Positions 18,261 through 51,661 of a stretch of 64,000 bases of DNA are shown here, piece after piece. The notes below the pieces were generated by a model that was given only the letters and a program-made list of their open reading frames with translations, did no database searches and was not told where the DNA came from. The stretch is from Macrostomum hystrix (Eukaryota > Animalia > Platyhelminthes), in the NCBI GenBank assembly GCA_950097015.1, contig CATNEN010000011.1, positions 1,798,001 through 1,862,000 of the forward strand, read 5' to 3'. The translations under genes and the position numbers were made by a program. How positions within the stretch are numbered: position 1 is the stretch's first letter; every line of letters starts with the position of its first letter.

Positions 18261-21200
18261 TCAGCCAGAGGACCGCAGTACGACAGTATGTCCTCGACTG
18301 CTAATCGGTGCAGACTTTTCTAGCCTTGGCTCACTGCCAGCTGTGCATAGGCCGCAGGTGCGTTGACATGCCGTGCTCACAAACGATGTGCCGCACTGGC
18401 CTTTGCGTTTGAGCAGTAGGCAGCGACGCAGCGACATGATGTTTCGACAGGCTGCGGGTTGGTACATTGTATGTATCGATAATTTGCGAAGCCTGTGCGA
18501 AAAACCACTGCACTTAAACTCGTAAAACAAAATTTTTGACGCTTTGACGCTTTTTGTGTTTGCGAAATGCGTATTTTTAGTCAAGCACACAAAACAACTT
18601 GTGTTTCACCCCCGCGGGCTATTGCTCCAAAGATCGACGGAAATGAGTCACATTGCTTATTTTCAGCGCACAAATATGTTTACGAAATTGTGTATAGAGT
18701 TTGCAGCAACGAGCAAATATAGCTATATTTTAGTAGCTATATATTAAGACCTTTAAATTGGATTTTACATTTTCCCAGATCAACAAACGCAGCTGCATTA
18801 TATCATTCACAGTGCAGGATGAAGTCTTGTACACTCACAGGCTTTGGCCTTCTTGGTGTGGCATAGTTCGCATGTCTCCCGGCACATCTTCAGCATGGTG
18901 TACGGATTGCTGGCGCAATGGCCGGCAGCTCGCCAGCGCTGGCATTTGTCAGCTGGTGCGTCATCCTTGCATAGGAGCTCCGGGAACTCTGACCAAGGAG
19001 ATAGGGTGGTTGTCGCAAATTTGGTTTGGGGTAGTGAAACTCTGACCAAGGAGATGGGGTGGTTGTCACAATTGGTTTAGAGTAGTGAAACTCTGACCAA
19101 GGAGATAGGGTGGTTGTCGCAAATTTGGTTTGGGGTAGTGAAACTCTGACCAAGGAGATGGGGTGGTTGTCACAATTGGTTTAGAGTAGTGAAACTCTGA
19201 CCAAGGAGATAGGGTGGTTGTCGCAAATTTGGTTTGGGGTAGTGAAACTCTGACCAAGGAGATGGGGTGGTTGTCACAATTGGTTTAGAGTAGTGAAACT
19301 CTGACCAAGGAGATGGGGTGGTTGTCGCAAATTTGGTTTAGGGTAGTGAAACTCTGACCAAGGAGATGGGGTGGTTGTCACAAATTTGGTTTAGGGGAAT
19401 CAAACTCTGACCAAGGAGATGGGGTGGTTGTCGCAAATTTGGTTTGGGGTAGTGAAACTCTGACCAAGGAGATGGGGTGGTTGTCGCAAATTTGGTTTAG
19501 GGTAGTGAAACTCTGACCAAGGAGATGGGGTGGTTGTCGCAAATTTGGTTTAGGGTAGTGAAACTCTGACCAAGGAGATGGGGTGGTTGTCACAATTGGT
19601 TTGGGGGAGTCAAACTGACCGACGTCTCAAGAAAGGCGAAGAACTCACTCTTCACGCACTGACACATCTCCGGCTTGACACACTTTCTGCCGTCCAGTAC
19701 CAGGCCCTTGCGACAGGCGCAGCCCTCTCTGATTGGCAGGTGGTAGCAGCTGGATTTGGTGCCGAAGAAGAGGTTCTCGCAGGATCGCGGACATGGATGC
19801 ATGTTGGTGGTGTACACCTTGTCTCTGTCGCATTGCTTTGCTGTGGATGTGATGTCAAATTAGGGATGTGAAAAATAACTGAATACGTAAACATGTTTTG
19901 GCATTCGGTTTTTTCTTGATAATTTGGTGTCGTAGGAGCAAAATTTTGGTGGTACAAATACTAGCTTATACTCCTAAGATATCATTTGTAGATATCAACG
20001 TCTCTAAATTCTTGCGATGAGGTGCTGCTTACGAGCGTATTGTCACAAAATTCTAAGATCAAGGACTAGTAAGCTACTTAAATATGGTTGCGTGATCACT
20101 CACGGCAGAAGGTCTTTGTTCGCCAGCGCGCGCCTGGAAAGCCGGCTTCGGCGCACTGCTCGGCCAGGTCTTTGTGCGCCTCACAGACGGCCCGCCGCAT
20201 CTCGGCCGGCTTCAGCCGATTGACGCAGGCGTCGTTTCGACAGTCGTTGGTCAGAGCCAGTGCCGGCACGCGGCCGCTAGCGATGCACCGGCCGAACGGG
20301 CCGCGTGGATCGCTCAGTCGACGGCACAGGGCGCGCGCCCGAGGAATCCAGGCATTGCTGCAGGCGCTCGAAGCGCTCAACACTGGAGCATTTTTGCACC
20401 TGTGCGGGAGGTGGGTTATCGATGCGAATGAAAGGAAATGAAATGTGTCAATGAAAATATAAAGACCGGCTATAGAGTGCACCATAAGACACAATTGATG
20501 ACCGGTTTGAATGTCTATGGTAAAAGTACAAATTTCTTGATCAAGCTGTGATAGTGGAAATTATATATGGATTGAGCCAGGCGATATAGGCTTTGGCCAT
20601 AGATATTCCAAAAACGAAACACATAGACAATACATATAAGATACCCAAATAGGCCAAAGTCCAAAGCCGTTTTAGGCCATAGACAACGATTTCAAAAGGA
20701 GGTTATACTATGTAATTAATTGCCGCTTGGCTCGGCCCATAGACTATTGTTTAACAATTTGATGAATACACCAATGAGACAGGGCCAAGCGGGGAATAAA
20801 CGACTGCGAAATACAGGAATAGTAAAAGCTATAAAAAGTTCAGTCACAGTAAAAATAGAAATGGCTGACTAAAAAGGAACCTAGACTTCTAAGCTTTCCG
20901 TGAAAGCTAAAAATAGAATGTTCGTTTCTCTGTGCACTTTAATCTAAATGTCGACATGTGCGTTTCTTGGGTAACAAATAAAAGCTTTCATCGTACTAGC
21001 GGACCAGCAAAGTACCTTTTTCCGGGCTTATCAGAATCATCTGGCACCCTGAAGCTGTTGCCAACCAAGTTATCCCTCTCAAAGTGCTCCTGCTTGGCGA
21101 TCACATTGACGCCCTCCCTAGTCATGTAGTCGTCATTCTGCTTGCCGTTGCAGTTGCCGCAGAGGCCGATCATGCGACCGGCGTATTCTTTGCCAACCTC

Positions 21201-24200
21201 AACGTAGCCGGTGTAGCGACCGTCGAATGCCGCTGTGAAGCGACAATTAGTGGCAACAAACTGAACGTAGGAGCCGGAGTAGAAGATGCGAACACCGCCC
21301 GAGCTGTAGGGCAGGCTAGTGATTTTGCCGTCAATCTGATGGTTTTAATATTGCCAGTGTAGCTTTGACATCGAAGGTCCCAATCAAGATGTACCCTTGA
21401 AATCTGTTAAGATTTATTGATAAAACGCTTCTGTCCAATCAATAGTCTAGATTTACTGATAAGACGCGTTTGTCCAATCAAACGTCTAGATTTATTGATA
21501 AAACGCTTCTGTCCAATCAATAGTCTAGATTTACTGATAAGACGCGTTTGTCCTATCAAACGTCTAGATTTATTGATAAGACGCGTTTGTCCAATCAAAC
21601 GTCTAGATTTACTGATAAGACGCGTTTGTCCTATCAAACGTCTAGATTTATTGATAAGACGCGTTTGTCCAATCAAACGTCTAGATTTATTGATAAGACG
21701 CGTTTGTCCAATCAAACGTCTAGATTTATTGATAAGACGCGTTTGTCCTATCAAACGTCTAGATTTATTGATAAGACGCGTTTGTCCTATCAAACGTCTA
21801 GATTTATTGATAAGACGCGTTTGTCCAATCAAACGTCTAGATTTATTGATAAGACGCGTTTGTCCTATCAAACGTCTAGATTTATTGATAAGACGCGTTT
21901 GTCCTATCAAACGTCTAGATTTATTGATAAGACGCGTTTGTCCTATCAAACGTCTAGATTTATTGATAAGACGCGTTTGTCCAATCAAACGTCTAGATTT
22001 ATAGATAAGAGGCTTTTGTCCAATCAAACGTCTAAATTTATTGATAAGACGCGTTTGTCCAATCAAACGTCTAGATTTATAGATAAGAGGCTTTTGTCCA
22101 ATCAAACGTCTAAGTTTATTGATAAGACGCGTTTGTCCAATCAAACGTCTAGATTTATAGATAAGAGACTTCTGTCCTATCACAGGTCTTGATTTATTGA
22201 TGTGAAAAAGCTTCTTTAAAATGATAAATTAAAATTATTTATTATTACCCTGAATTCTCTCACGACTCATATGGGTATGCAGGTAGTAGGTTATGGAAAT
22301 GATCAACAGAAGTGCACAGGGTCTCACCAGCAGTCGTTTGTGCTGATGCAGTCTGAAGGTGTGTCCAAGCATTCTTACATCCAGAAGCCTGACATAAGTG
22401 TAGTTCTTATTATCGCCGTGGTGTTCATTTTTCACCTGAACCTCGAACGCGCACGGGTCGGCCGAGTTTCTCAGCTTGGTCAGAGTGTACTTGCACTCGC
22501 CTTGAAAGTGCAGCGGCACTCCGTCGTACATTAGAAAGTGAGGATCGCCGAGGGCGTCGCAACGGCACGCTAAAAAATATTTGCGATACGGGTCTGAAAG
22601 AATCTGCGGTACATCAAAGAATCTGGAGAGAAGTCGGCACATCAAAGAATCTGGAGAGAAGTCGGCACATCAAAGAATCTGGAGAGAAATCGGCACATCA
22701 AAGAATCTGAAGAGAAGTTGGCACATCAAAGAATCTGGAGAGAAATCGGCACATCAAAGAATCTGAAGAGAAGTCGGCACATCAAAGAATCTGGAGAGAA
22801 GTCGGCACATCAAAGAATCTGGAGAGAAGTTGGCACATCAAAAAATCTGGAGAGAAATCGGCTCATCAAAGAGTCTGGAGAGAAGTCGGTACATCAAAGA
22901 ATCTGGAGAGAAATCGGCACATCAAAGAATCTGGAGAGAAGTCGGCACATCAAAGAATCTAGAGAGAAGTCGGCACATCAAAGAATCTGGAGAGAAGTCG
23001 GCATGTGATGTGTTGGCACATCAAAGACACTAGGTTGATATCGGCACATCAAAGAAACTTCATTGATTTCGGCACATCAAAGAAACTACGTTGATGCAGG
23101 CACATCAAAGAAATTAGGTTGATGTCGGCACATCAAAGAAACTTCATTGATTTCGGCACATCAAAGAATCTGGAGAGAAGTCGGCACATCAAAGAATCTT
23201 GAGAGAAGTCGGCACATCAAAGAATCTAGAGAGAAGTCGGCATGTGATGTATTGGCACATCAAAGACACTAGGTTGATATCGGCACGTCAAAGAAACTTC
23301 ATTGATTTCGGCACATCAAAGAAACTACGTTGATGCAGGCACATCAAAGAAATTAGGTTGATGTCGGCACATCAAAGAAACTTCATTGATTTCGGCACAT
23401 CAAAGAATCTGGAGAGAAGTCGGCACATCAAAGAATCTTGAGAGAAGTCGGCACATCAAAGAATCTAGAGAGAAGTCGGCATGTGATGTATTGGCACATC
23501 AAAGAAACTACGTTGATGTCGGCACATCAAAGAAATTAGGTTGATGTCGGCACATCAAAGAAACTAGGTTGATGTCGGCAGATCAGATAATGTCGGAAGA
23601 TTTGGGCTTATCAGAGAATATCAGAGAATACTTATCTGGCCATAATTATGAGATAAGGCAAAAATTTTTCACAGACTAAAAAACTTACTCTTTCTTTCAG
23701 CGCACACTTCGGTGTCCACATCAGTCATTTGGCGACAGTTGCCGAGCCGATCCTTGATATAGTAGATTGTTACCACCTTCTGCTTTCCAGCTACGCACGG
23801 CTTTTCAACCGTTTTAGGTTTAGGGCATCCTGTTTGCGGCGAAAAAGGTAGAAAAAACTACTTATCTTGAAAAACAATATGTTTTTCATACCACAAAAAT
23901 GTAAAGTTTTCTTTAATAGACACAATCTACTCACTGCAGGGCTTCACAACACGACGTCTTTTGAGCTTGCAGACGCAGCGTTCCAGCCGGTGCTCGAGAT
24001 ACTCGTATACTCGCTTGTTGCCGATGCACTTTCGACGCAGCACTCGCTTGTTAGCCGGGCAAGCTAATAAATATTAGCAATTTTGTTTTGTTTATCACTG
24101 GCCAATAAAGTGTGACGCCATTTTTTTTCCGACAAAATTCAATGTAGTTAAATATACAATTAGATGCTAGCACTTCTAGCTTATTAGTCGGCACACGTTG

Positions 24201-27200
24201 CTAAAAATAGCTTAGTGTACATACATGTTGCTAAAAATAGCTTTGTGTACATACTATGTTGCTAAAATTAGCTTTGTGTACATACTATATTGCTAAAAAT
24301 AGCTTTGTGTACATACTGTGTTGCTAAAAATAGCTTTGTGTGTACATGTTGCTAGAAATAGCTTTGTGCACAATGATACTAAAATTTATTTCTAGGCATG
24401 TTGCTAAAAATTACTTTCCGCGAATTTCGCTAAACGTTTTACTTTGCGAAGGGCTCCTTAACGGTCACCTCTTCAGAATTTCCTATCCTGAATATTCTAA
24501 AATTTTCTTCTGAAAGCATTCAAAGATTAGGAAAATGTTTAGTTACTAAAAATAATTTAAATTCTCACAGATCCTGTTTCGGTGATGACTCCTGGAACGG
24601 TGACAACGGTTCCCGCTGAGCTTGTAGCTGGTTCGGATTGTTTGGATTTTATTTTCCACGCATCGGCGCTTCACTCTGGGCTTGGGGCAGGCTGCGATCA
24701 ACATAAGCGTTTGTGTAGATTTAGTGTCTTATAATCAAAAGGACAGATGCAAATATAATAGTGAGAAATCGAATGGGAAAGACAAACTAAATGGTAGAAT
24801 ATAAGTATAAGAAATAGCAGATTTTAAGTAGGGGATCTCGAGTTCACTCGTTGATTAAACCTGCTCCAATCGGGTCAGATGTGCAGCCGACTGCACAGCC
24901 GCTGCTATTGCGTGGCGCAACTGAAGGCTGCGTACAGCTGTTCAGTCCTTGGACTGTGGGGACGCCACACCCAACTTCATGCAGTTACCCCAGCTGATGC
25001 TGGTACCCATTTAACAACTGGCTGAACTGAAGCAATGCAGAGTTAATTGTCTTGCTAACTGACACAAATTGTTCAAGTGGAGCCGGGAATCGAACCACCG
25101 ACTTTCAAGTCGGAATTCCGACGCTGTAACCACTGGGCTACAGTCCCCGCTCGAGGGGTAGAATTAGAGTGGGTAGAATTAGAGTGGGTAGAATTAAGAG
25201 GGTAGAATTAGAGAGGGTAGAATTAGAGTGGGTAGAATTAGAGTGGGTAGAATTAAGAGGGTAGAATTAGAGTGGGTAGAATTAAGAGGGTAGAATTAGA
25301 GAGGGTAGAATTAGAGTGGGTAGAATTAGAGTGGGTAGAATTAGAGTGGGTAGAATTAGAGTGGGTAGAATTAGAGTGGGTAGAAACAGGAAGGTAGAAT
25401 TGGAGAGAAAGAGCAGCCACTAACCGCATCGAATCTTCTTTGTTGAGACTTTCTTGCGGCACTGACAGTTGACCAGCTCCTCGTGCTCATAGAAGATGCT
25501 CTGATAGCCGTCGCTGCGGCAGACGCCTTTCGTCTTCTTCTTGAGAATCTTGCACTCTGCGAGATTCAATTAAAAAAATTATAAATTTTTGCAGGAGGGT
25601 TGTGGCACTTGCACATCATTTGGAGACAGCAGACCCGCAGACAGCGTGTAGGCAATTCTGTAGGCCCGTTTCTGTTGGCTTTGAAACACGCACGCACACA
25701 GGTGTGTACATCTGCCCTGACTTTCTCATCATCAGGCAGTGTACACATTCACTGAGCATTGGAGGTTGGCCCTCAAGGGCGTATATTGAACGACAAGCCT
25801 TCTCTCCGCGGCTGCGCCCAAATGAATGTGGCCTCGCCGCGGAATCGAGCTCAGGACCTTGGTGCGATACGCGAACGCGTTAGACCACACTACGAGATAA
25901 GATCTGTTGGTGTTTTTTACTCGAACAAAAGTACAAACATTTCAAGATACAGCTGTTAAAAGTACACTAGAGCAAGAAGACAGAAGTTCCCTGCCAAATC
26001 ACGGTATTAATCTATTTCTTATGAAAGTCAAGCAGCAGATAAGCAAAGCCTACTGGGTTTCTCCTTAGTAATTCTCGATCTGCGAATGCACTCCTTAGGT
26101 GTCAGAGTATAAGTAACATAGGTTGACACAACGTAGTTATTGATGCACTCCCTGGCTCTGTAGTCCTTCGGGCAGGAGCATCGCTCTCTGCGAACTTTCA
26201 CCTGTCTGACGCATTTGCAGTCGCTGGCCCTGTAACTGACCAGCTTCACCTTGCGGTAGCCGTCATCGCCGCATGGAGATCGGTCTGGCTTCTCCTTCTC
26301 ATAGCAGACTGCAGATTTTTGAGATTATTGAATTAAGGTTAGTTCGTTCGGTGTTCGGTGTGGGTTCTGCTTATGGCGTGGGTTCTGCTTATGGCGTGGG
26401 TTCTGCTTATGGCGTGGGTTCTGTCTATGGGATGGGTTCTGTTTATGGGATGGGTTCTGCTTATGGCGTGGGTTCTGTTTATGGGATGGGTTCTGTTTAT
26501 CTGGTGGGTTCTGTTTACGGGATGGGTTCTGTTTACGGGATGGGTTCTGTTTACGGGATGGGTTCTGTTTACGGGATGGGTTCTGTTTACGGGATGGGTT
26601 CTTATACGGGATGGGTTCTGTTTACGGGATGGGTTCTGTTTACGGGATGGGTTCTGTTTACGGGATGGGTTCTGTTTATCCGGTGGGTTCTGTTTATGGG
26701 ATGCGTTCTGTTTATGGGATGGGTTCTGTTTATGGGATGGGTTCTGTTTATCGGGCGGGTTCTGTTTATGGGAGGGGCTCTGTTTATGGGATAAGTTCTG
26801 TCTATGGGATGGGTTCTGTTTATCCGGTGGGTTCTGTTTATGGGATGGGTTGCGTTTATCCGATGGGTTCTGTTTATCGGGTGGGTTCTGTTTATGGGAT
26901 GGGTTCTGTCTATGGATTGGGTTCTGTCTATGGAATGGGTTCTGTTTATGGGGTGGGTTCTGTTTATGGGGTGGGTTCTGTTTATCGGATAGGTTCTGTT
27001 TATGGGATGAGTTCTGTCTATGGGATAGGTTCTGTCTATAGGATAGGTTCTGTCTATGGGATGGGTTCTGTCTATGGGATGGGTTCTGTTTACGGGATGG
27101 GTTCTGTTTATCCGGTGGGTTCTGTTTATGGGATGCGTTCTGTTTATGGGATGGGTTCTGTTTATGGGGTGGGTTCTGTTTATCGGATAGGTTCTGTTTA

Positions 27201-42200: not shown

Positions 42201-45200
42201 TAACGACCGTTACTATTTTTCGTTACTCAATTTTTCCGTTCCCAATTGGTCAGTAACGATCGTTACCGTAATCGCCGTTATCTTTTGGTAACGCACTCAA
42301 CACTCTTTGTGTTTTGAATCCAAAAAATTGGTTTTCGGATACTAAAATTAGGTTTTCCGATACTACGAGCTAAAATTAGGTTTTCGGATACTAAAATTAG
42401 GTTTTCGGATACTAAAATTAGGTTTTCGGATTCTCTATGTCGGTTGCACTTTTAGTGACGGAAGGCAAACGAAGAAGGAAGACGAATTAGATTTCAATTC
42501 GATCAGTCGAGTTACTCACAGACTGGACTTCGTTCGTAGCTGACAGATCGCTTGCACACGCCTCTAATGAGTAAGTGCGACACCTGAACCACTTCCTGCG
42601 AGCGATGCTTCACGCATCTTCGCCGCGTAGTGGGCTTTGGACAGCCTAAGAATGTACGTCACACAAGGTACTCGTCGGCACTTTGATTTAATATAGTGAT
42701 ATATGATGTATATATATATATTGTGATAAACATGCTTTGAGTTGAGGATAACTAACTATACGTGGAGAGTTGGGGATAATTATACATAGAGAGTTAGGGA
42801 TAATTATACTTGTACATAGAGAGTTTGGGATAATTATACATAGAGAGTTGGGGATAATTATACATAAAGAGTTGGGGATAATTATACATAGAGAGTTGGG
42901 GATAATTATACATAAAGAGTTGGGGATAATTATACATAGAGAGTTGGGGATAATTATACATAGAGAGTTGGGGATAATTATACATAGAAAGTTGGGGATA
43001 ATTGTACTTCGAGAGTTGGGGATAATTATACATAGAGATTTGGGGTAATAGTACATAGAGAGTTGGGGATAATTATACATAGAAAGTTGGGGTAATAGTA
43101 CATAGAGAGTTAGGGATAATTATACATAGAGAGTTGGGGATAATTATACATAGAGGGTTGGGGATAATTATACATAGAGAGTTGGGGTAATTATACATAG
43201 AGAGTTGGGGATAATTATACATAGAGAGTAGGGGATAATTATACATAAAGAGTTGGGGATAATTATACATAGAGAGTTGGGGATAATTATACATAGAGAG
43301 TTGGGGATAATTATACATAGAGAGTTGGGGATAATTATACTTGTACATAGAGAGTTGGGGATAATTATTCATAGAGAGTTGTGGATAATTATACATAGAG
43401 AGTTGGGGATAATTATACATAGAAAATTGGGGATAATTGTACTTCGAGAGTTGGGGATAATTATGCGTCGAGAGTTGTGGATTGTATTTCGAAAGTTGGG
43501 ATCTCTAAATGGAGCACAGCAGAGTAGAACTCACGACAGCGCCTTGGAACCTGCTTCACGCGCTGATGACAGACACAGTTGCGCAGGGTGTGATGCACCC
43601 AGGTGTCGACTCTGACGCCGTTGCGGCCGCAACGACCACGGCGATAAAGCGGACTAGACTGACACTCTAAAAGAGGCATCGGAAGATGGAGTTGGCTGAT
43701 TACCTATTAAGAATATTTTCTATCTAAGATAATATGTAAAAAAAACTAAAAAGTAACGACAAAAAAGTTGATAAAATGTAAAATATCGATGGATTAGTTG
43801 ATTAAGAAACCAAAAAGTAACAATTTAGAAATTGAAAGAAACGAACTAGCAGCAATAAACATTTAAAATAAATAACAAAATAAAAGTGACTATAAAATAA
43901 AGATCTGACAGTTGTTTTAGAAGCATAAAAATAACGATTTAACAAACTTCTAATTAAACAACTGATTGTCACTTGAGAAACTTAAAGCAATGACTTGACA
44001 ATCAAGGAACCTTCAAAGTAATGATTAGGCAGACGATTAAAATTATCAAAAAAAACGAACTGATTTAGGAACTAAAAAGTGAAAGTTTAAGTTAAAATAA
44101 TTATGTGTAGAAAAAAAAGCAGCAACGATACGTAAATCGTTAAAAAAAGTAACGCAACAGTGATAGGATCACTCACTATTCGGAATGACCTTCTCGTCCT
44201 CTTCAGCCAAGCAAAGTCCATCTTTGAGTTTGTATCGGGTTGAGTAGACAGTCTCAATCTGGTCGGCTGAGCAGGCTCGCTTCACCACCGGCCTGGGGCA
44301 GCCGCAGACTTCGCTGCTTCTCTTAACCAGCGACTTGCAGGCGCAGCTTCGTCGGCGAGTTTCTCGCACCGTCACCGAGCGCTTGTTCTTCAAGCATTTG
44401 CCCCGCTTTACTTCAAACCTTCTGGGACAGTCTGGTTCGGACAGAAGTTAAGAAAAGGTAACGAAATTCTCGTTTTTTATAAGTAACGGAAGCGTCTTTA
44501 ACGAGATTTGAACAGAAGCACTTACGAACTCTCCTAGTAGTCTTGCATGAGTGACCGATGCACTGGCCGTCTTTCAGTGTGTATTTTACCTGCGACTGTA
44601 CCAGAACTCCGCGAATGCACCTGCTGCTTGTGCTGCTCTTCGGACAGGCTGAGGAAAAAAGGAATTTTTCTTATTTTTGCGACTTTGAGCCATAATTCTC
44701 ACCTAGAAGGTTAGAATTATTATGTTAATTAACACTCCCACGATAAATTCACAATAAAATCCAGCCGATCACCATCTATAAAATACATATATAATAAATG
44801 CACCAACCAATGCACTAAAAATGTACATACACTCTGACCAACCCCACTCCCTAATGTACATCCACTCTAGCCAACCCCACTACCAGATGTACATCCACTC
44901 TAACAAACCCCACTCCCAGATGTACATAAACTCTAACAAACCCCACTACCAGATGTACATACACTCTAACAAACCCCACTACCAGATGTACATACACTCT
45001 AGCCAACCTCACTCCCCAATGTACTTATACACTCTGACCAACCCCACTCCCTAATGTACATCCACTCTGGCCACCCCCCACTCCAAATGTACATCCACTA
45101 TAACCAACCCCAAAACCTTATTTACTTTATGTCAGGCCAAAATGCGTGCTTACCGCATCTCACCAGACGATTGTACACCCGCTTAAGGCATTTACAATTG

Positions 45201-48200
45201 TACGGATAATAATTCGCGTAGGTCTTTGTGCGCCAACCCTTGACACAGTCCGACAGCTTCACCGTGTTGGCGCCGCATTCTGGATAAGCGAGTAGTGAAA
45301 ACTGTTTGCTAGGTATCTATCTACCTGACTTCAAGCGCTACTCCATGTCACTCACTGATTCGCACAACAGATGTAGTTCGCTTCAGCAGACACCTGCCAT
45401 CCACCAGGTGCTGCACAAACTGGTGCCTGTAGATTCGATTGCCGCGACATTCTTGCTCCAATCGGGATTTCTCGCAGCCTAAAAAAATGTTTGCCTTGTA
45501 GATTTTTTGTGCTTTTAATATCATTACTGAAAAATTGGCGACAGTAGACCTTAAGAACAAATACTCACGACATCGTTCGCGCTGTGAGATGACCCGGGTG
45601 ACGCATACGCAATCTTGGGCCTCCTCGATTAGCTGGCGAACTACCCGGTACCCGTCTGACTGACAGCTTGACACTCGGCTGTGCAGCTGACCGCGACACT
45701 CTAAATAAACACAATGAGTCGCGAATCAATCACAAATCAATCAAATAAAATATAATTACTGTTTGATTACTTGTTGGCTTCTTGTGCACTTTAACGCTGC
45801 GCTTGCAGCTCGACTTGGCAGCGTCTAATTTGTGACTGACAGCTGTCACTGTCCACACATTGTCGTCGCACTCTTCAATTGTGTAATCCTTGCCGCAGCC
45901 TGTTAAATAAGCAAACATGATGAAGCTTTTGCATACCCTGAAGTTATCTCACTGTGCACCACAGCCGCCTCACTCAGCACTGAGCAGTAACCACTCCAGT
46001 TCACACCTAAAACAACCACCTCACGTCGCACTATGCAAAAGCAACCACCTCACGCCGCACTATGCACAAACAACCACCTCACGCCGCACTATGCACAAAC
46101 AACCACCTCACGCCGCACCAGGCAAAAACAATCACGTCACGCCAGACTACACACGAACAACCACCTCACACCACACTACACACGAACAGCCACCTGACGC
46201 CCCATCATACACAACCAACTCACTTTCAAAAGCCAAAGCAACTAAAAATATTCAGTTAGTTGGCAGGCACAGCTCCCCTCACCGCACTTCTCGTAGGTGA
46301 TGCGCCTCCGTTTGACGCAAGAGCAGCCTCGTCTCTCCTGTCTGTACAGAATCACGCGCCGATAGCCATTGAAAGCGCAGGAGCTTTTCACCGGTGGGTA
46401 CCTCTTGTTGCAAACTGGCGTTTGAGTTGGTTGAGTCTTCATCTGCATTGTACTCGTAGTTCATCAATTTGGAATAGGAAAAACTAGTTAAAAAAGCGGA
46501 AACTCACCAACCGGCTTCTTCGTGACATTGATCTTCTCTTTGCAACGACCACTGCGCAGTTGAAAGCTTCGCAGCATGGAATGCAGCACGCTGCCCCGGC
46601 AGTAGCTACTGCGCTGCGGTTTAGGACAGCCTGAAGCGGGAAACAAAGTGTCATGCTGCGAAGACACCTCAGCATAAAAAAGGTACCTGAGCGGCCGAAA
46701 AAAACTCACAGCACTTCACGGTTCTCTTTCGCACAGGTCGAACGCACTGGCAGTTGCGAACTTCTGACCAGCTTCGAGTCACAATTTGAGTGCAGTCGGC
46801 CCGACAGCTGGAGCGAGATTTTATGCGAAGCTTGGGACACACTGAAAATGGTACGTTCATTACTTTAAAATATAAACTGGCTTAAGTAGCTCGTATATCA
46901 ATCGCATTTTGCCACTGACATTTCCCCAACACTCCCAGATACCAACCCCCTCACTCCCTGCCCATCAAACCCACCACCTCACTCCCTGCCCCTCAAACCC
47001 ACCACCTCACTCCCTGCCCCTCAAACCCACCACCTCACTCCCTGCCCCTCAAACCCACCACCTCACTCCCTGCCCCTCAAACCCACCACCTCACTCCCTG
47101 CCCCTCAAACCCACCACCTCACTCCCTGCCCCTCAAACCCACCACCTCACTCCCTGCCCCTCAAACCCACAACCTCACTCCCCGTCCATCCAACCTCCAA
47201 AAATAGTCACTCACAGATTGGAATTCGCTTCACTCGAGTCTCAACTTTACAAGAATTTTTTTTCAATCGATAAATGGTGCTGATTTGCATCTTGACAGCT
47301 CCGTCACATCTTAGGCGCACTTTCGTCTTGGGACAGGCTGTGGAATTAGAAATATATAATTTTAAACTCTACGAAAATCTAAGTCAGGGATAAGAAAGAA
47401 GGCTTACCACATCGTACTCGAAATCGTCTAGTTCTAGTTTTACATCGGCAATTTATATAATTGGTTTTTAACTCCGTGACGGTCATGTACTGGCCGCGAC
47501 ATGTGCCAGGCTTCCTTCGCACACCAACAGTGCAGTCCGGTTTCAATGACACCTGCTTGGTGTAGGCGGTGCAAGCGAAGTCGACAACCTTTTCGCCGGT
47601 TTCAATTCGGTAGAGGCTGTTGTCGATGCACTGGATCCGCTGGGCTGGCTTCTCGCAGTCTGTGGGCGGTGAGTTTTTCTAAGACACATCAGTTTTTTTA
47701 GATAAACCCGTCACGGAGTCACTGTACTTTGACGGTTGGCTCTCAAGGGCGTAATTGAACGACAAGCCAGGCCCCCAAGCCTTCTCTCCGCGGAATCGAG
47801 CTCAGAACCCTCGTTACCGCTTAGCCAAAAAATAACAGGTAGGATAAAGGTGCGACACAATGCACTCACCCGGAGTGCACCTCTTTCTGGTGCTGAGTTT
47901 TCTTCGCTGACAGACGCAGTCGTCCAAATACACCGTGAGACTGTTCTCAGTGCGCCAGCCACTGCGATCGCATTTTGTCTTGGTGTATTGTGTGCCAATG
48001 GGGCAGTGGCGGTCTACATTAGGAGAAAAAAACGTTCGAGTTAATTTAGTTGTCAATTTTTAGGAGGGGAGAACAGTTCGGAAAATGATATGGAGAGGAC
48101 AGTGAGAAATGGTGTGGGACAATGAAAGTGAGTGAAGGAGAGGGAGAGAAGTGTGAAGGAGAGTAAGAGAATGATAATTTGAGGAAATTGTGAGGAGAGT

Positions 48201-51200
48201 GTAAAAAGGAGAGTGTAAGAAGGAACGAGAACGAGAGGGAGAGAAAGAGAGGGAGAGAAGTGTGAAGGAGAGTGTGAGAAGGAGAGATGGAGAGTGTGAG
48301 AAAAAGAGTATGAGAAGGAGAGTGTGAGAAGGAGAGTGAGAAGGAGAGTGTGAGAAGGAGAGTGTGAGAAGGAGAGTGTGAGAAGGAGAGTGTGAGAAGG
48401 AGAGTGTGAGAAGGAGAGTATGAGAAGGAGAGTGTGAGAAGGAGAGTGAGAAGGAGAGTGTAAGAAGGAGAGTGTGAGAGGGAGAGAAGGAGAGTGTGAG
48501 AAGGAGAGATGGAGAGTGTGAGAAAAAGAGTATGAGAAGGAGAGTGTGAGAAGGATAGTGTAAGAAGGAGAGTGTGAGAGGGAGAGAAGGAGAGTGTGAG
48601 AAGGATAGTGTAAGAAGGAGAGTGTGAGAGGGAGAGAAGGAGAGTGTGAGAAGGAGAGATGGAGAGTGTGAGAGGGAGAGAAGGAGAGTGTGAGAAGGAG
48701 AGATGGAGAGTGTGAGAGGGAGAGAAGGAGAGTGTGAGAAAAAGAGTATGAGAAGGAGAGTGTGAGAAAAAGAGTATGAGAAGGAGAGTGTGAGAAGGAG
48801 AGTGAGAAGGAGAGTGTGAGAAGGAGAGTGTGAGAAGGAGAGTGTGGGAAGGAGAGTGAGAAGGAGAGTGTGAGAAGGAGAGTGTGAAAAGGAGAGAAGC
48901 AGAGTGTGAGAAGGAGACTGAGAAGGAGAGTGTGAGAAGGAGAGTGTGAGAAGGAGAGTGTGAGAAGGAGAGTGAGAAGGAGAGTGTGAGAAGGAGAGTG
49001 TGAGAAGGAGAGGAAGCAGAGTGTGAGAAGGAGAGATGGAGAGTGTGAGAGGGAGAGAAGCAGAGTGTGAGAGTGTGAGAAGGAGAGTGTGAGAAGGAGA
49101 GAAGCAGAGTGTGAGAGGGAGAGAAGCAGAGTGTGAGAGGGAGAGAAGGAGAGTGTGAGAAAAAGAATATGAGAAGGAGAGTGTGAGAAGGAGAGTGAGA
49201 AGGAGAGTGTGAGAAGGAGAGTGTGAGAAGGAGAGTGTGAGAAGGAGAGTGAGAAGGAGAGTGTGAGAAGGAGAGTGTGAGAAGGAGAGAAGCAGATTGT
49301 GAGAAGGAGAGATGGAGAGTGTGAGAGCGAGAGAAGCAGAGTGTGAGAGGGAGAGAAGGAGAGTGTGAGAAAAAGAGTATGAGAAGGAGAGTGTGAGAAG
49401 GTGAGGAGGAGAGTATGAGAAGGATTGGTGGCAGCAACTAGTCCTCACCAGCCCTAGTCCTGGTCACTCGCTTCCGTTTCACGCAGCCGTCGCCCTCGTA
49501 GGTAATGGTGGTGAGGTAGAGAATCCTACCGGAGATGCAGTGCCGCACGTGTCTAGTCTTTGGACAAGTGACCGCCACGGTAGGAGCCTCATCTGGTTAA
49601 AGGGGCGAATCAATCAAGATTACAGGCGTAAATTATGCATGCAATAATTTGGGATAAAGACTTATTTAATAACTAAACTTTTCGGCAAATACTCGTTCAT
49701 TCGTAACCAGAAGCATTTGTCTTTTTCAACCTCAAAAAAGTTAGAACAGCTACTCGATGCCATGTCACATCATTTCGCACACCAAGCAGTAGAGAATGAC
49801 AGGAGAACCAGAATGAACCAAACCAGTGACACAGTGAACAGCGGTGTTGTCATTGTGAAGTTTCTGTGTAAATTTTCATTCCATTTTGTATATTTTAGCA
49901 ATTACTAAATAGTTTTGTTACTCGATCCGCAGCCAGCGAGGTGGCAATTCACGCACTCAGATACCGCACACAGGCACACACTCACACAGGTGTGTACATC
50001 TGCTCATCGTCTGAGCATTGGAGGTTGGCCCTCAAGGAAGTAAATTTGCACAAGGCCCCAAGCCTTCTCTCCGCGGCTGCGCCCCAAATGAATGTGGCCT
50101 CGCCGCGGAATCGAGCTCAAGGACCTTGGTGCTAGAGGCAAACTGCCTTAAGTTCAGTGATCCCCTAATTTCCTATTGTTATACTAATGTTGTTTTCTTA
50201 GAATTAGTTAATAAGGTGACTAAAATAAGCAGTGCTGCAGTAGCAATTATTTTAAGGAAAATAATTCTGCTCGTGTTTTGTGTACAAACTTGACTCTGAG
50301 GCGGCGGTGGCAGCTGGTTTGATTTTAGTCGACGTCATCTGATTTGCTGCGTCGCCCAGTAATTCGTCCATGCTGACGCCCAGGTAGCCTGCGAGGGCAG
50401 CAGTCATTTTCTGGTCCCATGGCAATCTTGCAATAGTTTTGTATTCTCGCGATAACTTTATATTTCTATAGGGCGACTCAAATGAGCCAGACACTTAATT
50501 CCCAATTGCTCCATTTTACCAAGCTGTAAAATCAGTACCAGCATCAGCTGGGGTAGATAGCTAGGTCTAAGCGGTTTCTTTGCAAGAAAAATCAAGAGCC
50601 TCATATGCATCCCCTATGTGGTTTCTTAATAAGGACTAAAACTTCAAGAGCCTCATTGAACCACAAAACGATTCCATTACAAGAATTAAACTTCAAGAGC
50701 CCCATTACACACGCCAAATTATTCCTGAACAGGAACTTAAACTTCAAGAGCCTCATATCGCAAGCCAAATGATTATTAAACAATAAATTAATCTTCTAGA
50801 GCCTCATATCGCAAACCAAATGATTCCTAAATTATAAATTAAACTTCAAGAGCCTCATATCGCAAGCCAAATGAAACATTAAGAGCTTCATTACCACACG
50901 CCAATTGATTCCTGAACAAAAAATGTTACTTCAAGAGCCTTATTATCATTCCTGAACAAGAAATGAAACTGCAAGAGCCTTATTATCATTCCTGAACAAG
51001 AAATGAAACTTCAAGAGCCTGATTATCATTCCTGAACAAGAAATGAAACTTCAAGAGCCTGATTATCATTCCTGAACAAGAAATGAAACTTCAAGAGCCT
51101 GATTATCATTCCTGAACAAAAAATGGAACTTCAAGAGCCTCATTATCGCACGCCAAATGATTCCTGAACAAGAAATGAAACTTCAAGAGCCTGATTATCA

Positions 51201-51661
51201 TTCCTGAACAAGAAATGAAACTTCAAGAGCCTGATTATCATTCCTGAACAAGAAATGAAACTTCAAGAGCCTGATTATCATTCCTGAACAAGAAATGAAA
51301 CTGCAAGAGCCTTATTATCATTCCTGAACAAGAAATGAAACTTCAAGAGCCTGATTATCATTCCTGAACAAGAAATGAAACTTCAAGAGCCTGATTATCA
51401 TTCCTGAACAAGAAATGAAACTTCAAGAGCCTGATTATCTTTCCTGAACAAAAAATGGAACTTCAAGAGCCTCATTATCGCACGCCAAATGATTCCTGAA
51501 CAAGAAATGAAACTTCAAGAGACTCAAGGCTACTAGACGAAGCTATCTAAAAGATCAGCATACAATTAATAATGACGAACTCACTCACCATCGGCAGCTA
51601 CTGAAGCTGAGCAATACAACAAAATGGCAACTATAAGCACAGCTATTCCTACAGACCGCAT
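18261..51661 (-). CDS. Large secreted Cys/Arg/Lys-rich modular protein (~2106 aa, 39 exons): signal peptide, 37 alternating Cys modules, vWD, C8, TIL, 2x ShKT; mucin/adhesive-like
   Basis: Hand-spliced exons, all GT-AG: 51661-51589 (MRSVGIAVLIVAILLYCSASVAAD signal peptide), 49592-49449, 48013-47870, 47659-47408, 47337-47215, 46841-46710, 46630-46508, 46414-46283, 45899-45771, 45700-45569, 45478-45356, 45279-45154, 44648-44526, 44431-44177, 43666-43535, 42645-42520, 41200-41051, 39570-39439, 38905-38774, 35433-35131, 33097-32975, 32894-32766, 32663-32538, 30964-30833, 30735-30610, 29882-29751, 29122-28853, 28531-28406, 26308-26054, 25556-25425, 24691-24569, 24063-23935, 23829-23689, then vWD 22569-22328 and 21335-21016 (CDALGDPHFLMYDG...FQGECKY, MIGLCGNCNG), C8 20399-20104, TIL 19840-19649, ShK 18988-18839 and 18451-18261. 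The sum is 6321 nt with an uninterrupted frame. Confidence 0.88.
18982..19615. repeat. 51/53-bp minisatellite, 12 units, each containing a copy of the ShK1 exon splice acceptor
   Basis: ctctgaccaaggagat starts at 18987, 19040, 19091, 19144, 19195, 19248, 19299, 19352, 19405, 19458, 19511, 19564. Confidence 0.92.
21410..22195. repeat. 39-bp minisatellite (tttattgataagacgcgtttgtccaatcaaacgtctaga), ~20 units
   Basis: Direct tandem repetition inside the vWD intron. Confidence 0.95.
22585..23590. repeat. 28-bp minisatellite (tcggcacatcaaagaatctggagagaag) with a second unit type and higher-order duplication
   Basis: Direct tandem repetition. Confidence 0.92.
24195..24380. repeat. ~31-bp short tandem array (gttgctaaaaatagctttgtgtacatac)
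   Basis: About 6 units visible. Confidence 0.8.
24861..25141 (-). mobile_element. tRNA-derived SINE, family B
   Basis: Minus strand tgtagcccagtggttacagcg...ggttcgattcccg (A/B boxes), then body gcaagacaattaactctgcattgcttcagttca..cagttgttaaatgggtaccagc. The body resembles the conserved central domain of widespread metazoan SINE superfamilies (recalled, not searched). Copies at 34478, 34809 and 57652. Confidence 0.82.
25155..25385. repeat. 15-bp minisatellite (gggtagaattagagt)
   Basis: Direct tandem repetition adjoining the SINE head. Confidence 0.9.
25715..25885 (-). mobile_element. Family-A SINE, partial
   Basis: Shares tggaggttggccctcaagggcg...ggaatcgagctcaggaccttggtgc with the 13742 copy. 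Confidence 0.72.
26345..28030. repeat. 18-bp minisatellite (gggttctgtttatgggat), ~90 units
   Basis: Direct tandem repetition; generates spurious ORFs on both strands. Confidence 0.95.
29150..29670. repeat. 16-bp minisatellite (gtactctagttcactc) split by a LINE fragment
   Basis: Units on both sides of the 29335-29546 insertion. Confidence 0.85.
29335..29546 (-). mobile_element. Short 3' fragment of a non-LTR retrotransposon (degenerate C-terminal zinc-knuckle region)
   Basis: Minus strand reads VEDAQRLLIDC, then after a frameshift RRHLGNNPILAVLTTNGPRVLSFLREI, matching the pattern [11 protein letters not shown]...YLGPNPDL...VRYLRAT of the 55-kb LINE; aataaataatgacaaaaac tail; actctagtt on both sides. 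Confidence 0.55.
30245..30560 (-). mobile_element. Family-A SINE, near full length
   Basis: gagggctgcgggcaatggcacatcatttggtgacactagacccgc...ggaattgagctcaggaaccttggtgcgagaggcaaacacgttagaccgc. Confidence 0.8.
31085..32450. repeat. 20-bp minisatellite (aacttatccccttaggttg[a/c]), ~68 units
   Basis: Exact 20-bp periodicity visible in the columns. Confidence 0.95.
33190..34475. repeat. 19-bp minisatellite (gggttgtagcctagtgaca), ~59 units plus degenerate lead-in; unit matches the family-B SINE 5' end
   Basis: Direct tandem repetition running into the SINE at 34478. Confidence 0.92.
34478..34756 (+). mobile_element. Family-B SINE (plus copy, damaged A box)
   Basis: ttgtagcctttt gttagggcgttgggctaacgacttgaagg...gtttgattcccgactcc...gcaagacacttaactctgcattgcttcagttcacccagctgttaaattggtaccagc. 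Confidence 0.85.
34809..35090 (-). mobile_element. Family-B SINE (minus copy), tail-to-tail with the 34478 copy
   Basis: Reverse complement begins aggttgtagcctagtggttagggcgtcggactaacgacttgaaggtcgggggttcgattcccg. Confidence 0.85.
35480..38545. repeat. 23/24-bp minisatellite (ttcaggagctatc[a/c]gttcag[atta/gtc]), ~3 kb
   Basis: Direct tandem repetition with variant blocks. Confidence 0.95.
38588..38722 (+). mobile_element. Family-A SINE 3' fragment
   Basis: gggcagaattgcctcctagctggctgcgggt...aaatatgatgtgccaccgcccacagccc. Confidence 0.65.
38955..39350. repeat. CT-rich low-complexity repeat (ttctctctattcctctctctcc)
   Basis: Polypyrimidine tandem units. Confidence 0.9.
39590..40975. repeat. 20-bp minisatellite (atcaacacactaaatgagtc), ~68 units
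   Basis: Exact 20-bp periodicity. Confidence 0.95.
41241..41500 (+). mobile_element. Family-A SINE with (ATT)n tail
   Basis: gtttgcctctcgcactaagatcctgagctcgattcc head; gtgtcaccaaatgatgtgccattgcccgcagccctc, then aattattattg tail. Confidence 0.8.
41652..42305. mobile_element. Non-autonomous hAT-like element with subterminal GTAACG/CGTTAC motifs
   Basis: Ends cagtgctgggcgcgtta ... taacgcactcaacact are imperfect inverted repeats, with clustered cgttac/gtaacg near both ends. No 8-bp TSD seen. Confidence 0.5.
42765..43490. repeat. 24-bp minisatellite (atacatagagagttggggataatt)
   Basis: Direct tandem repetition. Confidence 0.93.
44820..45110. repeat. ~33-bp tandem array (atgtacatccactctaacaaaccccactaccag)
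   Basis: About 8 units. Confidence 0.85.
46005..46200. repeat. ~29-bp degenerate tandem array (aacaaccacctcacgccgcactatgcaca)
   Basis: About 6 units. Confidence 0.75.
46945..47180. repeat. 28-bp minisatellite (cctcactccctgcccctcaaacccacca)
   Basis: About 8 units. Confidence 0.9.
48110..49430. repeat. GA-rich ~14-bp repeat (gagaaggagagtgt)
   Basis: Polypurine tandem units; spurious S/H/L/T ORFs on the minus strand. Confidence 0.92.
49922..50148 (-). mobile_element. Family-A SINE
   Basis: ccgcagccagcgaggtggcaattc...tggaggttggccctcaagg...ggaatcgagctcaaggaccttggtgctagaggcaaac. Confidence 0.78.
50630..51510. repeat. ~40-bp minisatellite (cttcaagagcctgattatcattcctgaacaagaaatgaaa)
   Basis: Direct tandem repetition in the first intron of the modular gene. 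Confidence 0.9.

What the first reader, a model, noticed from the sequence alone, without database searches (positions are those of the whole stretch)
18261..51661. Hidden 33-kb, 39-exon gene for a polycationic disulfide-module protein ending in vWD-C8-TIL-ShK-ShK
Seen: ~40 tiny GC-rich islands between minisatellites splice into one 2106-aa ORF. It has a signal peptide, ~1600 aa of short Arg/Lys-rich Cys modules (CPK..C...Y..C / C..C..G.R...C.C...C), a mucin-type D assembly (vWD, C8, TIL) and two ShKT domains. Established: vWD-C8-TIL mediates polymerisation in gel mucins, vWF and several invertebrate glue proteins; ShKT domains occur in toxins and secreted mucosal proteins. Inference: a secreted glue, mucus or rhabdite-type fibre whose rod is a chain of small disulfide-bonded, positively charged beads, with the polymerisation unit at the C-terminus. 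I do not recognise the bead module as a named family (at most a distant, Trp-less TSP1-like pattern). A relationship to flatworm adhesive proteins is possible but untested.
Basis: partly seen in the sequence, partly recalled or inferred. Interest (0 to 1): 0.85.

Follow-up and report, generated by a model that had tools for sequence, protein, structure and literature searches.

The report
Flatworm giant basic bead-chain protein
This flatworm (Macrostomum) gene is real and expressed: 39 small exons make a 2106-residue, strongly positively charged secreted protein built from about 37 small disulfide-held beads of a kind found only in flatworms, ending in a mucin-type assembly unit; what it does in the animal is still untested.

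Summary
Transcript-like contigs from four public runs of one study join exons 3-15 at all 12 predicted junctions with no mismatches and read on into exons 2 and 16.

- **Tail:** Pfam confirms VWD, C8, TIL and ShK; the second ShK scores below the cut-off.
- **Rod:** 1610 aa, 9.5% Cys, 26% Lys+Arg, net charge +296. Modules A (C-x8-C-x18-C) and B (C-x10-C-x17-C-x-C-x10-C) alternate strictly.
- **Module identity:** no consistent Pfam family, no PDB sequence match, and no solved fold at Z 5 or more. AlphaFold2 models it at pLDDT 96.8 as three-stranded beta-meanders.
- **Not hidden in the genus:** M. lignano has an annotated, uncharacterised orthologue (PAA78532.1, 2136 aa, 80% identical, collinear, every Cys conserved).
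- **Family range:** every source-named hit carrying the module is a flatworm protein. These include giant VWA proteins of Schistosoma, Echinococcus, Clonorchis and Taenia.
- **Not Mlig-ap1 or Mlig-ap2.**

The glue or fibre function and polymerisation remain inference. It is a new variant of a known kind.

The parts
51589..51661 (-). Exon 1: start codon and signal peptide (n-region MRS, hydrophobic core, small residues before the predicted cut); ends in phase 1
   Evidence: Sequence read; model. The join to exon 2 was not seen directly.
50290..50388 (-). Possible extra cassette exon (33 aa, phase 1-1, AG/GT); not part of the 39-exon model
   Evidence: Its start (GYLGVSMDELLGDA) is conserved in the M. 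lignano model A0A1I8IWZ4 (P0001) but absent from PAA78532.1. Unresolved.
49449..49592 (-). Exon 2: first A module
   Evidence: Model. The loose end at 48014 reads into its 3' end.
47870..48013 (-). Exon 3: B module
   Evidence: Joint 47659/47870 and contig pieces.
47408..47659 (-). Exon 4: fused A+B unit
   Evidence: Both junctions.
47215..47337 (-). Exon 5: A module
   Evidence: Both junctions.
46710..46841 (-). Exon 6: B module variant with 7 Cys
   Evidence: Both junctions; Cys spacing.
46508..46630 (-). Exon 7: A module
   Evidence: Both junctions.
46283..46414 (-). Exon 8: B module
   Evidence: Both junctions.
45771..45899 (-). Exon 9: A module
   Evidence: Both junctions.
45569..45700 (-). 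Exon 10: B module
   Evidence: Both junctions. The 90-nt intron after it is stop-free in frame but is spliced out.
45356..45478 (-). Exon 11: A module
   Evidence: Both junctions.
45154..45279 (-). Exon 12: B module
   Evidence: Both junctions.
44526..44648 (-). Exon 13: A module (4 Cys)
   Evidence: Both junctions.
44177..44431 (-). Exon 14: fused B+A
   Evidence: Both junctions.
43535..43666 (-). Exon 15: B module
   Evidence: Joint 43666/44177. The loose end at 43534 reads into exon 16.
42520..42645 (-). Exon 16: A module
   Evidence: The loose end reads CPKPTTRRRC. Model; orthologue alignment.
41051..41200 (-). Exon 17: B module with a longer loop
   Evidence: Model; gap-free alignment to P0031.
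39439..39570 (-). Exon 18: A module
38774..38905 (-). Exon 19: B module
35131..35433 (-). Exon 20: irregular 8-Cys unit in mid-rod (spacing 18-12-5-9-11-27-10)
   Evidence: Conserved in P0031.
32975..33097 (-). Exon 21: A module
32766..32894 (-). Exon 22: B module
32538..32663 (-). Exon 23: A module
30833..30964 (-). Exon 24: B module variant with 7 Cys
30610..30735 (-). Exon 25: A module
29751..29882 (-). Exon 26: B module
   Evidence: Acceptor refined.
28853..29122 (-). Exon 27: fused A+B unit, the unit that was folded
   Evidence: AlphaFold2 pLDDT 96.8. Single copy in the genome.
28406..28531 (-). Exon 28: A module
26054..26308 (-). Exon 29: fused B+A
25425..25556 (-). Exon 30: B module
24569..24691 (-). 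Exon 31: A module
23935..24063 (-). Exon 32: B module
23689..23829 (-). Exon 33: last A module; it carries its own fourth Cys
22328..22569 (-). Exon 34: first part of VWD
   Evidence: Pfam VWD 2.5e-08 on the exon-34 stretch as first drawn (22379-22591). Boundaries refined against P0031.
21016..21335 (-). Exon 35: second part of VWD
   Evidence: Pfam VWD 1e-13.
20104..20399 (-). Exon 36: C8 domain
   Evidence: Pfam C8 9.6e-10.
19649..19840 (-). Exon 37: TIL domain
   Evidence: Pfam TIL 2.5e-08.
18839..18988 (-). Exon 38: first ShKT domain
   Evidence: Pfam ShK 22.1 bits, cut-off 20.9.
18261..18451 (-). Exon 39: second ShKT-like domain, short tail and stop codon
   Evidence: Pfam ShK 17 bits, below the 20.9 cut-off; the six-Cys spacing 8-8-8-3-2 is present.

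Best explanation
The gene encodes a secreted extracellular structural protein of a Macrostomum flatworm.

Shown:
- A signal peptide.
- A 1610-aa rod of strictly alternating A and B modules (about 19 A and 18 B, plus one irregular unit). It has 9.5% Cys, 26% Lys+Arg and a net charge of about +296.
- One C-terminal VWD-C8-TIL assembly and two ShKT-type domains.
- The mRNA is made and spliced as predicted, at least over exons 2-16.

Predicted: each module of about 42 residues is a flat three-stranded beta-meander, and successive modules follow one another in a defined way.

Inferred:
- Each bead is stapled by two disulfides. The 8 Cys of a unit split 4+4, because the last A module, which has no B after it, carries its own fourth Cys.
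- The result would be a stiff, protease-resistant, polycationic filament.
- I think it is packed in gland granules and released as a cohesive or adhesive fibre.
- The fibre would stick electrostatically to polyanions such as sulfated or sialylated glycans, biofilm-coated substrate and the glycocalyx.
- The D assembly would link chains covalently.

This is the design principle of the flatworm cohesive protein Mlig-ap1. Here the low-complexity Lys/Arg stretches are replaced by a folded bead chain.
For: - Gene model and phases.
- Twelve junctions plus two loose ends in transcript contigs. There is no retrocopy, since exon 27 matches one genomic place only.
- Signal peptide read directly.
- Pfam VWD, C8, TIL and ShK.
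- Composition and charge.
- All 153 rod Cys and 37 tail Cys, and 385 of 416 basic residues, are conserved in the 80%-identical M. lignano orthologue.
- AlphaFold2 on one unit gave pLDDT 96.8, pTM 0.65 and six strands. On two units it gave pLDDT 96.8 and pTM 0.67.
- The only whole-unit shape resemblances are to elongated bacterial G5/SasG-type single-layer beta rods, and they are weak (Z 3.6, TM 0.4-0.54).
- In M. lignano, positive charge on Mlig-ap1 plus a vWD-C8-TIL is the published cohesive mechanism: PMC6410801.
- Weak lead: a different M. lignano protein of 2784 aa and pI 10.1 is in the footprint mass-spectrometry data. Its best match is the Echinococcus member of this family and it has a peptide with the C-x-C-P-K-P junction motif.
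Against: - There are no data on where the gene is expressed.
- Tryptic peptides of the orthologue's tail were not found in the part of the footprint and tail mass-spectrometry supplements that is held. Those files are truncated and the rod is nearly untryptic.
- There is only one D assembly and it sits at the C-terminus. VWF and gel mucins polymerise through N-terminal D1-D2-D'D3 and a C-terminal CTCK, which is absent here. Many single D assemblies do not polymerise.
- The homodimer prediction gave no answer.
- Relatives with the same beads occur in endoparasites that lack duo-gland adhesion. The bead chain as such therefore has a more general role.
- Ser+Thr is only 13% and there are four N-glycosylation sequons, so it is not a mucin.
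Confidence: 0.5

Rival explanations
1. It is an internal extracellular-matrix protein, of basement membrane or parenchymal matrix, and not an exocrine glue. The bead chain would be a flatworm-specific matrix rod, and this gene a Macrostomum variant that swapped VWA/PAN for VWD-C8-TIL.
For: The same A/B bead arrays make up giant proteins of 3,600-5,500 aa with a VWA domain. These occur in Schistosoma, Echinococcus (annotated 'Collagen alpha-3(VI) chain'), Clonorchis, Taenia, Sparganum and Calicophoron. Those animals have no duo-gland adhesive organs. All family members are basic, as expected of proteins that bind matrix glycosaminoglycans.
Against: VWD-C8-TIL plus ShKT tails are typical of exocrine and mucosal products (my knowledge of these families, not tested here). 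The paralogue family is expanded in Macrostomum, with at least five more TIL-ShK-ShK tails. That fits secretory products better than a core matrix component. No localisation data exist either way.
Confidence: 0.25
2. It is a reproductive secretion: egg-shell or egg cement, female antrum lining, or a seminal-fluid scaffold. It would not be part of locomotory adhesion or mucus.
For: Macrostomum has cement, shell and prostate glands that make abundant secreted proteins (PMC4490696 and PMC5977470, listed). A disulfide-rich, protease-resistant polycation would suit a permanent egg glue.
Against: No expression data. At 80% identity with every Cys conserved between two Macrostomum species, it does not look like the fast-evolving reproductive genes described for the genus (PMC7336406, title and abstract only).
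Confidence: 0.15
3. The 39-exon model wrongly joins two neighbouring genes: a bead-array gene (exons 1-33) and a separate VWD-C8-TIL-ShK-ShK gene (exons 34-39).
For: At four other loci of this genome a TIL-ShK-ShK tail lies next to a bead-array gene. Some M. lignano models have the tail domains before an array (P0046, P0047). The junction between exons 33 and 34 was not seen in reads.
Against: - Exon 33 ends and exon 34 starts in phase 1. There is no stop after the array and no start or signal peptide for the tail.
- M. lignano PAA78532.1 has the same join and aligns without a gap.
- One contig of 6395 nt has 4201 nt after exon 15, and the model needs 4178 nt to the stop.
Confidence: 0.05
4. 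It is a defensive product: an antimicrobial polycation, or a carrier that releases ShK-type channel-blocking peptides.
For: Extreme positive charge and two ShKT-type domains.
Against: - The protein is very large and has a rigidly conserved Cys scaffold.
- ShKT domains are common non-toxic tails of secreted proteins (my knowledge).
- No Lys-Tyr pair of the kind described for the sea-anemone toxin is seen between the third and fourth Cys (read; not a functional test).
- No dibasic processing sites flank the ShK domains in any particular way.
Confidence: 0.05

Closest known systems
Macrostomum lignano PAA78532.1 / A0A267FZY8 (hypothetical protein BOX15_Mlig022069g3, 2136 aa)
   Same: It is the orthologue. 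It is 79.8% identical over 2105 aligned residues with no internal gaps. It has the same order of A/B modules, the same irregular middle unit and the same VWD-C8-TIL-ShK-ShK tail, and every Cys is conserved.
   Different: It comes from another species and its N- and C-terminal ends differ. It is uncharacterised: I found no paper that names it.
Mlig-ap1, the cohesive protein of the M. lignano duo-gland adhesive (Wunderer et al. 2019, PMC6410801); also Tmed-ap1/ap3 and Mile-ap1/ap3
   Same: A secreted flatworm protein that combines very high Lys/Arg content with one vWD-C8-TIL assembly and many Cys. In the published model the positive charge provides cohesion and is countered by a polyanion at release.
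   Different: In Mlig-ap1 the basic regions are Cys-free low-complexity repeats. It also carries a C-type lectin domain and 17 EGF modules, and none of these is present here. Here the charge sits on folded disulfide beads, and two ShKT domains follow the D assembly. It is neither an orthologue nor a member.
Giant VWA-domain proteins of parasitic flatworms (e.g. Schistosoma mansoni 'putative von Willebrand factor type A domain-containing protein' 4717 aa; Echinococcus granulosus 'Collagen alpha-3(VI) chain' 5275 aa; Clonorchis, Taenia, Sparganum, Calicophoron) and M. lignano A0A1I8GF89 (3793 aa)
   Same: They are built largely from the same A/B bead units (E-values 1e-151 to 1e-87 against the M. 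lignano 3793-aa member; profile hits). They are basic and 7.5-10% Cys. ShKT is seen at or near the C-terminal end in at least the Calicophoron and M. lignano members.
   Different: They carry VWA, and some carry PAN/apple, in place of VWD-C8-TIL. They are twice as long and are encoded in much larger exons in this genome (a 1873-aa open frame at C38). None is characterised.
Gel-forming mucins and von Willebrand factor (D-assembly polymers)
   Same: The VWD-C8-TIL order of a D assembly; a secreted, Cys-rich, very long protein.
   Different: There is only one D assembly and it is C-terminal. There is no PTS mucin domain, no CTCK knot and no VWC.
Bacterial G5-E rods (Staphylococcus aureus SasG, PDB 5dbl; G5 domain 6oh1)
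   Same: The predicted shape is similar: long single-layer three-stranded beta sheets laid end to end to make a thin rod (VIA Z 3.6 over 86 residues; ESM Atlas G5 clusters at TM 0.40-0.46).
   Different: There is no sequence relationship. The bacterial rods have no disulfides. The scores lie in the range of chance arrangements. This is an analogy only.

Membership tests
D assembly (VWD-C8-TIL) proteins | VWD, C8 and TIL domains in that order | tested here: met
   Pfam: VWD 2.5e-08 and 1e-13 on exons 34 and 35, C8 9.6e-10, TIL 2.5e-08. VWD scores 1.1e-26 on the whole orthologue.
Gel-forming mucin / VWF polymer | N-terminal D1-D2-D'D3 array | tested here: not met
   There is one D assembly only, at residues about 1644-1995 of 2106.
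Gel-forming mucin / VWF polymer | C-terminal cystine-knot (CTCK) dimerisation domain | tested here: not met
   No CTCK hit. The C-terminus is ShK-ShK.
Gel-forming mucin / VWF polymer | Central Pro/Thr/Ser-rich O-glycosylated domain | tested here: not met
   Ser+Thr is 13.4% of the whole protein, Pro is 4% of the rod, and there are four N-x-S/T sequons.
Gel-forming mucin / VWF polymer | Disulfide-linked multimers | tested here: inconclusive
   The homodimer prediction of the D assembly scored 0.01 and the verdict was 'no answer'. This needs non-reducing gels.
Mlig-ap1-type flatworm cohesive protein | C-type lectin domain and EGF array around the D assembly | tested here: not met
   Pfam finds neither in the exons nor in the orthologue. 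The architecture of ap1 is taken from PMC6410801.
Mlig-ap1-type flatworm cohesive protein | Cys-free low-complexity Lys/Arg repeat regions | tested here: not met
   The basic residues lie inside regular 8-Cys units.
Mlig-ap1-type flatworm cohesive protein | Expression in adhesive gland cells and presence in footprints | not testable with these tools
   No expression-site data. Peptides were not found in the truncated supplements.
ShKT domain | Six Cys with ShK spacing and a Pfam ShK match | tested here: met
   The first copy scores 22.1 bits (cut-off 20.9) with spacing 8-8-10-3-2. The second copy scores 17 bits, below the cut-off, with spacing 8-8-8-3-2.
Thrombospondin type 1 repeat (TSP1/TSR) | W-x-x-W layer, C-S-x-T-C-G motif and a Pfam TSP_1 match | tested here: not met
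   Trp is 0.4% of the rod. There was no TSP_1 hit in 78 units at E up to 0.1. No TSR structure is among the top rows of the fold searches, apart from a pleiotrophin domain at Z 3.4.
Flatworm A/B bead family (undescribed; defined here) | Unit C-x8-C-x18-C-x12-C-x10-C-x17-C-x-C-x10-C repeated in tandem, joined by C-x-C-P | tested here: met
   There are 17 regular units in the model and in the orthologue. Eight Cys columns are invariant in 78 units from 12 proteins. Profile hits at E up to 0.001 number 30 among 1.84 billion representatives, and every hit that carries an organism name is a flatworm protein.

The most novel reading that the evidence does not exclude
The A/B bead would be a previously undescribed, flatworm-restricted protein fold: a two-disulfide, three-stranded beta-meander of about 42 residues. 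In tandem it would build rigid polycationic nanorods, a eukaryotic disulfide-stapled counterpart of bacterial SasG-type rods. Flatworms would use it for their secreted fibres and glues (this gene) and for giant matrix or surface proteins in Schistosoma, Echinococcus and other parasites. That would make it both a new biomaterial module and a flatworm-specific structural target.
Probability: 0.3. Interest if true: 0.7.

Novelty: new variant of a known kind. Interest (0 to 1): 0.5.

Why it matters
Three reasons.

1. **Bioadhesion.** It adds a structurally different polycation to the short list of molecules that could explain flatworm adhesion and mucus. Only ap1, ap2 and ap3-type proteins have been characterised so far. 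Here the charge sits on a folded, disulfide-stapled rod instead of a floppy low-complexity chain, and that idea can be tested in biomimetic glues.

2. **An unannotated domain family.** The bead has no consistent Pfam match, no solved structure and no recognisable relative outside flatworms. Yet it makes up most of several 2,000-5,500-residue proteins in every flatworm group sampled, including major human and livestock parasites. There these proteins are labelled 'hypothetical' or mislabelled 'collagen VI'. A family definition would correct those annotations and point to a flatworm-specific extracellular structure.

3. **Gene structure.** One module per phase-1 exon, embedded in minisatellite-filled introns, is a clean example of exon shuffling or duplication. 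Paralogues of the same family are encoded in huge single exons instead.

Tried and rejected
- **First exon chain.** It over-called 61 exons. I fixed this with learned splice-site matrices and a higher exon penalty.
- **Boundary corrections.** Exons 10/11 and 26 were corrected by reading the DNA. Exon 34 was corrected against the orthologue.
- **Single-exon search of the own genome.** It found only the exon itself. The modules are too diverged for pairwise search, so a profile was needed.
- **Fold searches.** Foldseek against the PDB gave a best E of 0.6. VIA-align wide on one and two units gave best Z of 4.7 and 4.6, matching only generic 40-residue meanders. The ESM Atlas search by shape gave TM up to 0.54, mostly G5 proteins and unnamed bacterial proteins. 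The search by features gave a best score of 0.79, which means nothing.
- **PDB sequence search with a 78-unit profile:** 0 hits at E up to 10.
- **Pfam on 78 units:** only scattered single chance hits.
- **Complex prediction on two copies of the D assembly:** no answer, and no evidence either way.
- **Paper searches.** Searches for the orthologue's accession numbers found nothing. Searches for Macrostomum with ShK, vWD or gland terms found no description of this protein.
- **Mass-spectrometry supplements of PMC6410801.** Orthologue peptides were not found, but the files are truncated.
- **Mlig-ap2.** I asked whether its 255-aa repeat (3 x 85) is made of these units. I could not check, because the repeat alignments are images.
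- **Cystine-knot reading.** I considered it because UniRef labels some M. lignano fragments CTCK or PDGF_2. I rejected it: there is no C-x-G-x-C motif and no knot-like match in the fold searches.
- **A versus B.** Profile comparison aligns them in register over 39 columns but only at 31% probability, so a common origin is suggested and not shown.
Full report
**1. Is the gene there?**

The Cys-rich open segments between 18 kb and 52 kb all lie on the minus strand.

It scored codon usage learned from the Cys-rich segments, used splice-site matrices learned in a first pass, and enforced reading-phase bookkeeping. I corrected four boundaries by reading the DNA. The result:

- 39 exons spanning 51661..18261, with 38 introns that are all GT-AG.
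- Exons 2-33 are all phase 1-1 and 123-303 nt long.
- Exons have 54% GC and introns 42%.
- The long introns hold about 20 minisatellite arrays.

**2. Is it expressed and spliced that way?**

Four public runs of one 2020 study hold 35% of the sampled words of 43450-48040. Exons make up 42% of that stretch.

Their contigs (4238, 6395, 4238 and 2309 nt) lie on the exons only. They skip all 12 introns between exons 3 and 15 at exactly the predicted bases, with no mismatch and CT..AC ends on the + strand. Loose ends at 48014 and 43534 read on into the end of exon 2 and the start of exon 16.

Exon 27 matches one place only in the 220-Mb assembly, so a processed DNA copy does not explain the joined form.

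The 6395-nt contig has 4201 nt after exon 15, and the model needs 4178 nt to reach the stop. This fits a transcript that runs through the VWD tail, but it is arithmetic and not a direct observation. Junctions 16-39 were not seen directly.

**3. The orthologue**

A B+A profile made from three stop-free stretches (two fused B+A exons, and exons 10-11 read through their stop-free intron) was scored against 1.84 billion representative proteins. It found 30 proteins at E up to 0.001.

The best cluster contains M. lignano PAA78532.1, a 'hypothetical protein' of 2136 aa. It aligns to the model over 2105 residues at 79.8% identity with no internal gap, so every exon junction is bridged. All 153 rod Cys, all 37 tail Cys and 385 of 416 basic residues are conserved.

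The window therefore comes from a Macrostomum species other than, or well diverged from, M. lignano. Earlier scan notes also name the genus. The gene is annotated in the genus, but I found no paper on it.

**4. Anatomy**

- **Exon 1** encodes a typical signal peptide.
- **The rod** alternates A modules (C-x8-C-x18-C, usually starting C-P-K) with B modules (C-x10-C-x17-C-x-C-x10-C). It starts and ends with A. Consecutive units are joined by C-x-C-P. One irregular 8-Cys unit (exon 20) sits in the middle.
- **Fused exons** exist in both orders, A+B in exons 4 and 27 and B+A in exons 14 and 29.
- **The last A module**, which has no B after it, carries its own fourth Cys. This suggests that the first Cys of each B exon belongs structurally to the preceding A bead, which would give 4+4 Cys per unit. 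That partition is inference.
- **Rod composition:** 14.6% Arg, 11.1% Lys, 9.5% Cys, 0.4% Trp, net charge about +296 and pI about 10.2.
- **The tail:** VWD (two exons), C8, TIL and ShK by Pfam. A second ShK-like domain scores just below the cut-off.

**5. What is the bead?**

- Pfam finds nothing consistent in four fused exons, in 78 units from 12 proteins, or in two whole relatives.
- A 78-unit profile finds no PDB sequence at E up to 10.
- AlphaFold2 with that alignment models one unit at pLDDT 96.8 and pTM 0.65 as six strands, three per module. Two units give pLDDT 96.8 and pTM 0.67.
- Foldseek finds no PDB match (best E 0.6).
- An exhaustive structural alignment to 48,161 chains gives nothing at Z 5 or more. 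Nearly all rows cover one 40-residue meander.
- The few whole-unit resemblances are to SasG and G5-type bacterial rods and lie at chance level (Z 3.6; TM 0.4-0.54).
- A and B align to each other in register but weakly.

The bead is therefore an undescribed small module. The claim of a new fold must stay cautious, because three-stranded meanders are generic and I did not have the model coordinates.

**6. The family**

Every hit that carries an organism name is from a flatworm. The named hits are:

- Several M. lignano paralogues.
- Giant VWA proteins of Schistosoma mansoni, S. japonicum, Clonorchis, Echinococcus (mislabelled collagen VI), Taenia, Hydatigera, Sparganum, Calicophoron and Echinostoma.
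- Fragments from Dibothriocephalus, Dicrocoelium, Opisthorchis and the monogenean Cichlidogyrus.

All the members I checked are basic.

In this genome, further bead arrays lie on contigs C1, C27, C38 and C39, some in very large exons. At least five more TIL-ShK-ShK tails, 39-56% identical to this one, lie beside four of them or elsewhere on C11.

**7. Function**

Nothing here shows where the protein is made. The anatomy points to an extracellular, covalently stabilised, polyanion-binding fibre: a signal peptide, a disulfide bead chain, very high positive charge, a D assembly and ShKT domains.

The closest functional parallel is Mlig-ap1, whose positive charge gives cohesion and is neutralised at release (PMC6410801). 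The architecture differs, however. There is no C-type lectin, no EGF array and no low-complexity KR region, so the protein is not a member of that family.

Parasite relatives with VWA keep an internal-matrix role open.

One weak lead: a different M. lignano protein in the published footprint proteome best matches the Echinococcus member of this family and contains the C-x-C-P-K-P junction motif. It was not among the proteins I held.

The homodimer test of the D assembly gave no answer.

**8. Verdict**

The gene itself is an uncharacterised but annotated Macrostomum gene. The lasting value is the definition of a flatworm-restricted bead module that also builds giant proteins in major parasites.

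Noticed in passing
window 50290-50388 (-): A 99-nt, phase 1-1, AG/GT-flanked stretch between exons 1 and 2. Its first 14 residues are conserved in one M. lignano gene model (A0A1I8IWZ4) but skipped in another (PAA78532.1). It may be a cassette exon that adds a 33-aa acidic or neutral linker after the signal peptide.
   Followed up: partly
window 250-5565 (+): A single 1771-aa open frame for a vitellogenin/apolipophorin-like large lipid transfer protein, with a VWD-type CGLCG motif near its end. Near-identical tryptic peptides of the M. lignano counterpart appear in the footprint mass-spectrometry supplement of PMC6410801.
   Followed up: partly
window 12949-13824 and 15975-16361 (+): Open frames that read like a TRAF-type protein: RING and TRAF zinc fingers, then a MATH domain in a later exon. 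This was judged by eye only, with no domain search.
   Followed up: no
window 18985-19616: A 53-nt minisatellite (12 copies) fills the intron before exon 38 and ends 3 nt inside exon 38, so the acceptor of exon 38 lies in its last copy. The scan holds a separate note on it (s1-337300).
   Followed up: partly
G000 C39:20125000-20154000 (L015, L016, L021); C1:14826000-14846620 (L013, L019); C27:1-31272 (L014, L017); C38:28931120-28953999 (L012): At four other loci a TIL-ShK-ShK tail (39-50% identical to this gene's) sits next to a long bead-array gene that ends in ShK and, by eye, PAN/apple-like sequence. This looks like a recurring gene pair or a tandem family. The bead arrays there are encoded in exons of up to 1873 codons, unlike the one-module exons here.
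   Followed up: partly
window 45479-45568 (-), intron 10: A 90-nt intron that is stop-free and in frame. If retained it would insert 30 residues between a B and an A module. The contigs show it spliced out.
   Followed up: yes
Proteins P0054 (Echinococcus granulosus) and P0055 (Schistosoma mansoni): Giant parasite proteins annotated 'Collagen alpha-3(VI) chain' or 'VWA domain-containing' match the M. lignano bead-array protein over 36-67% of its length. By sequence, the collagen label looks like an annotation error.
   Followed up: partly
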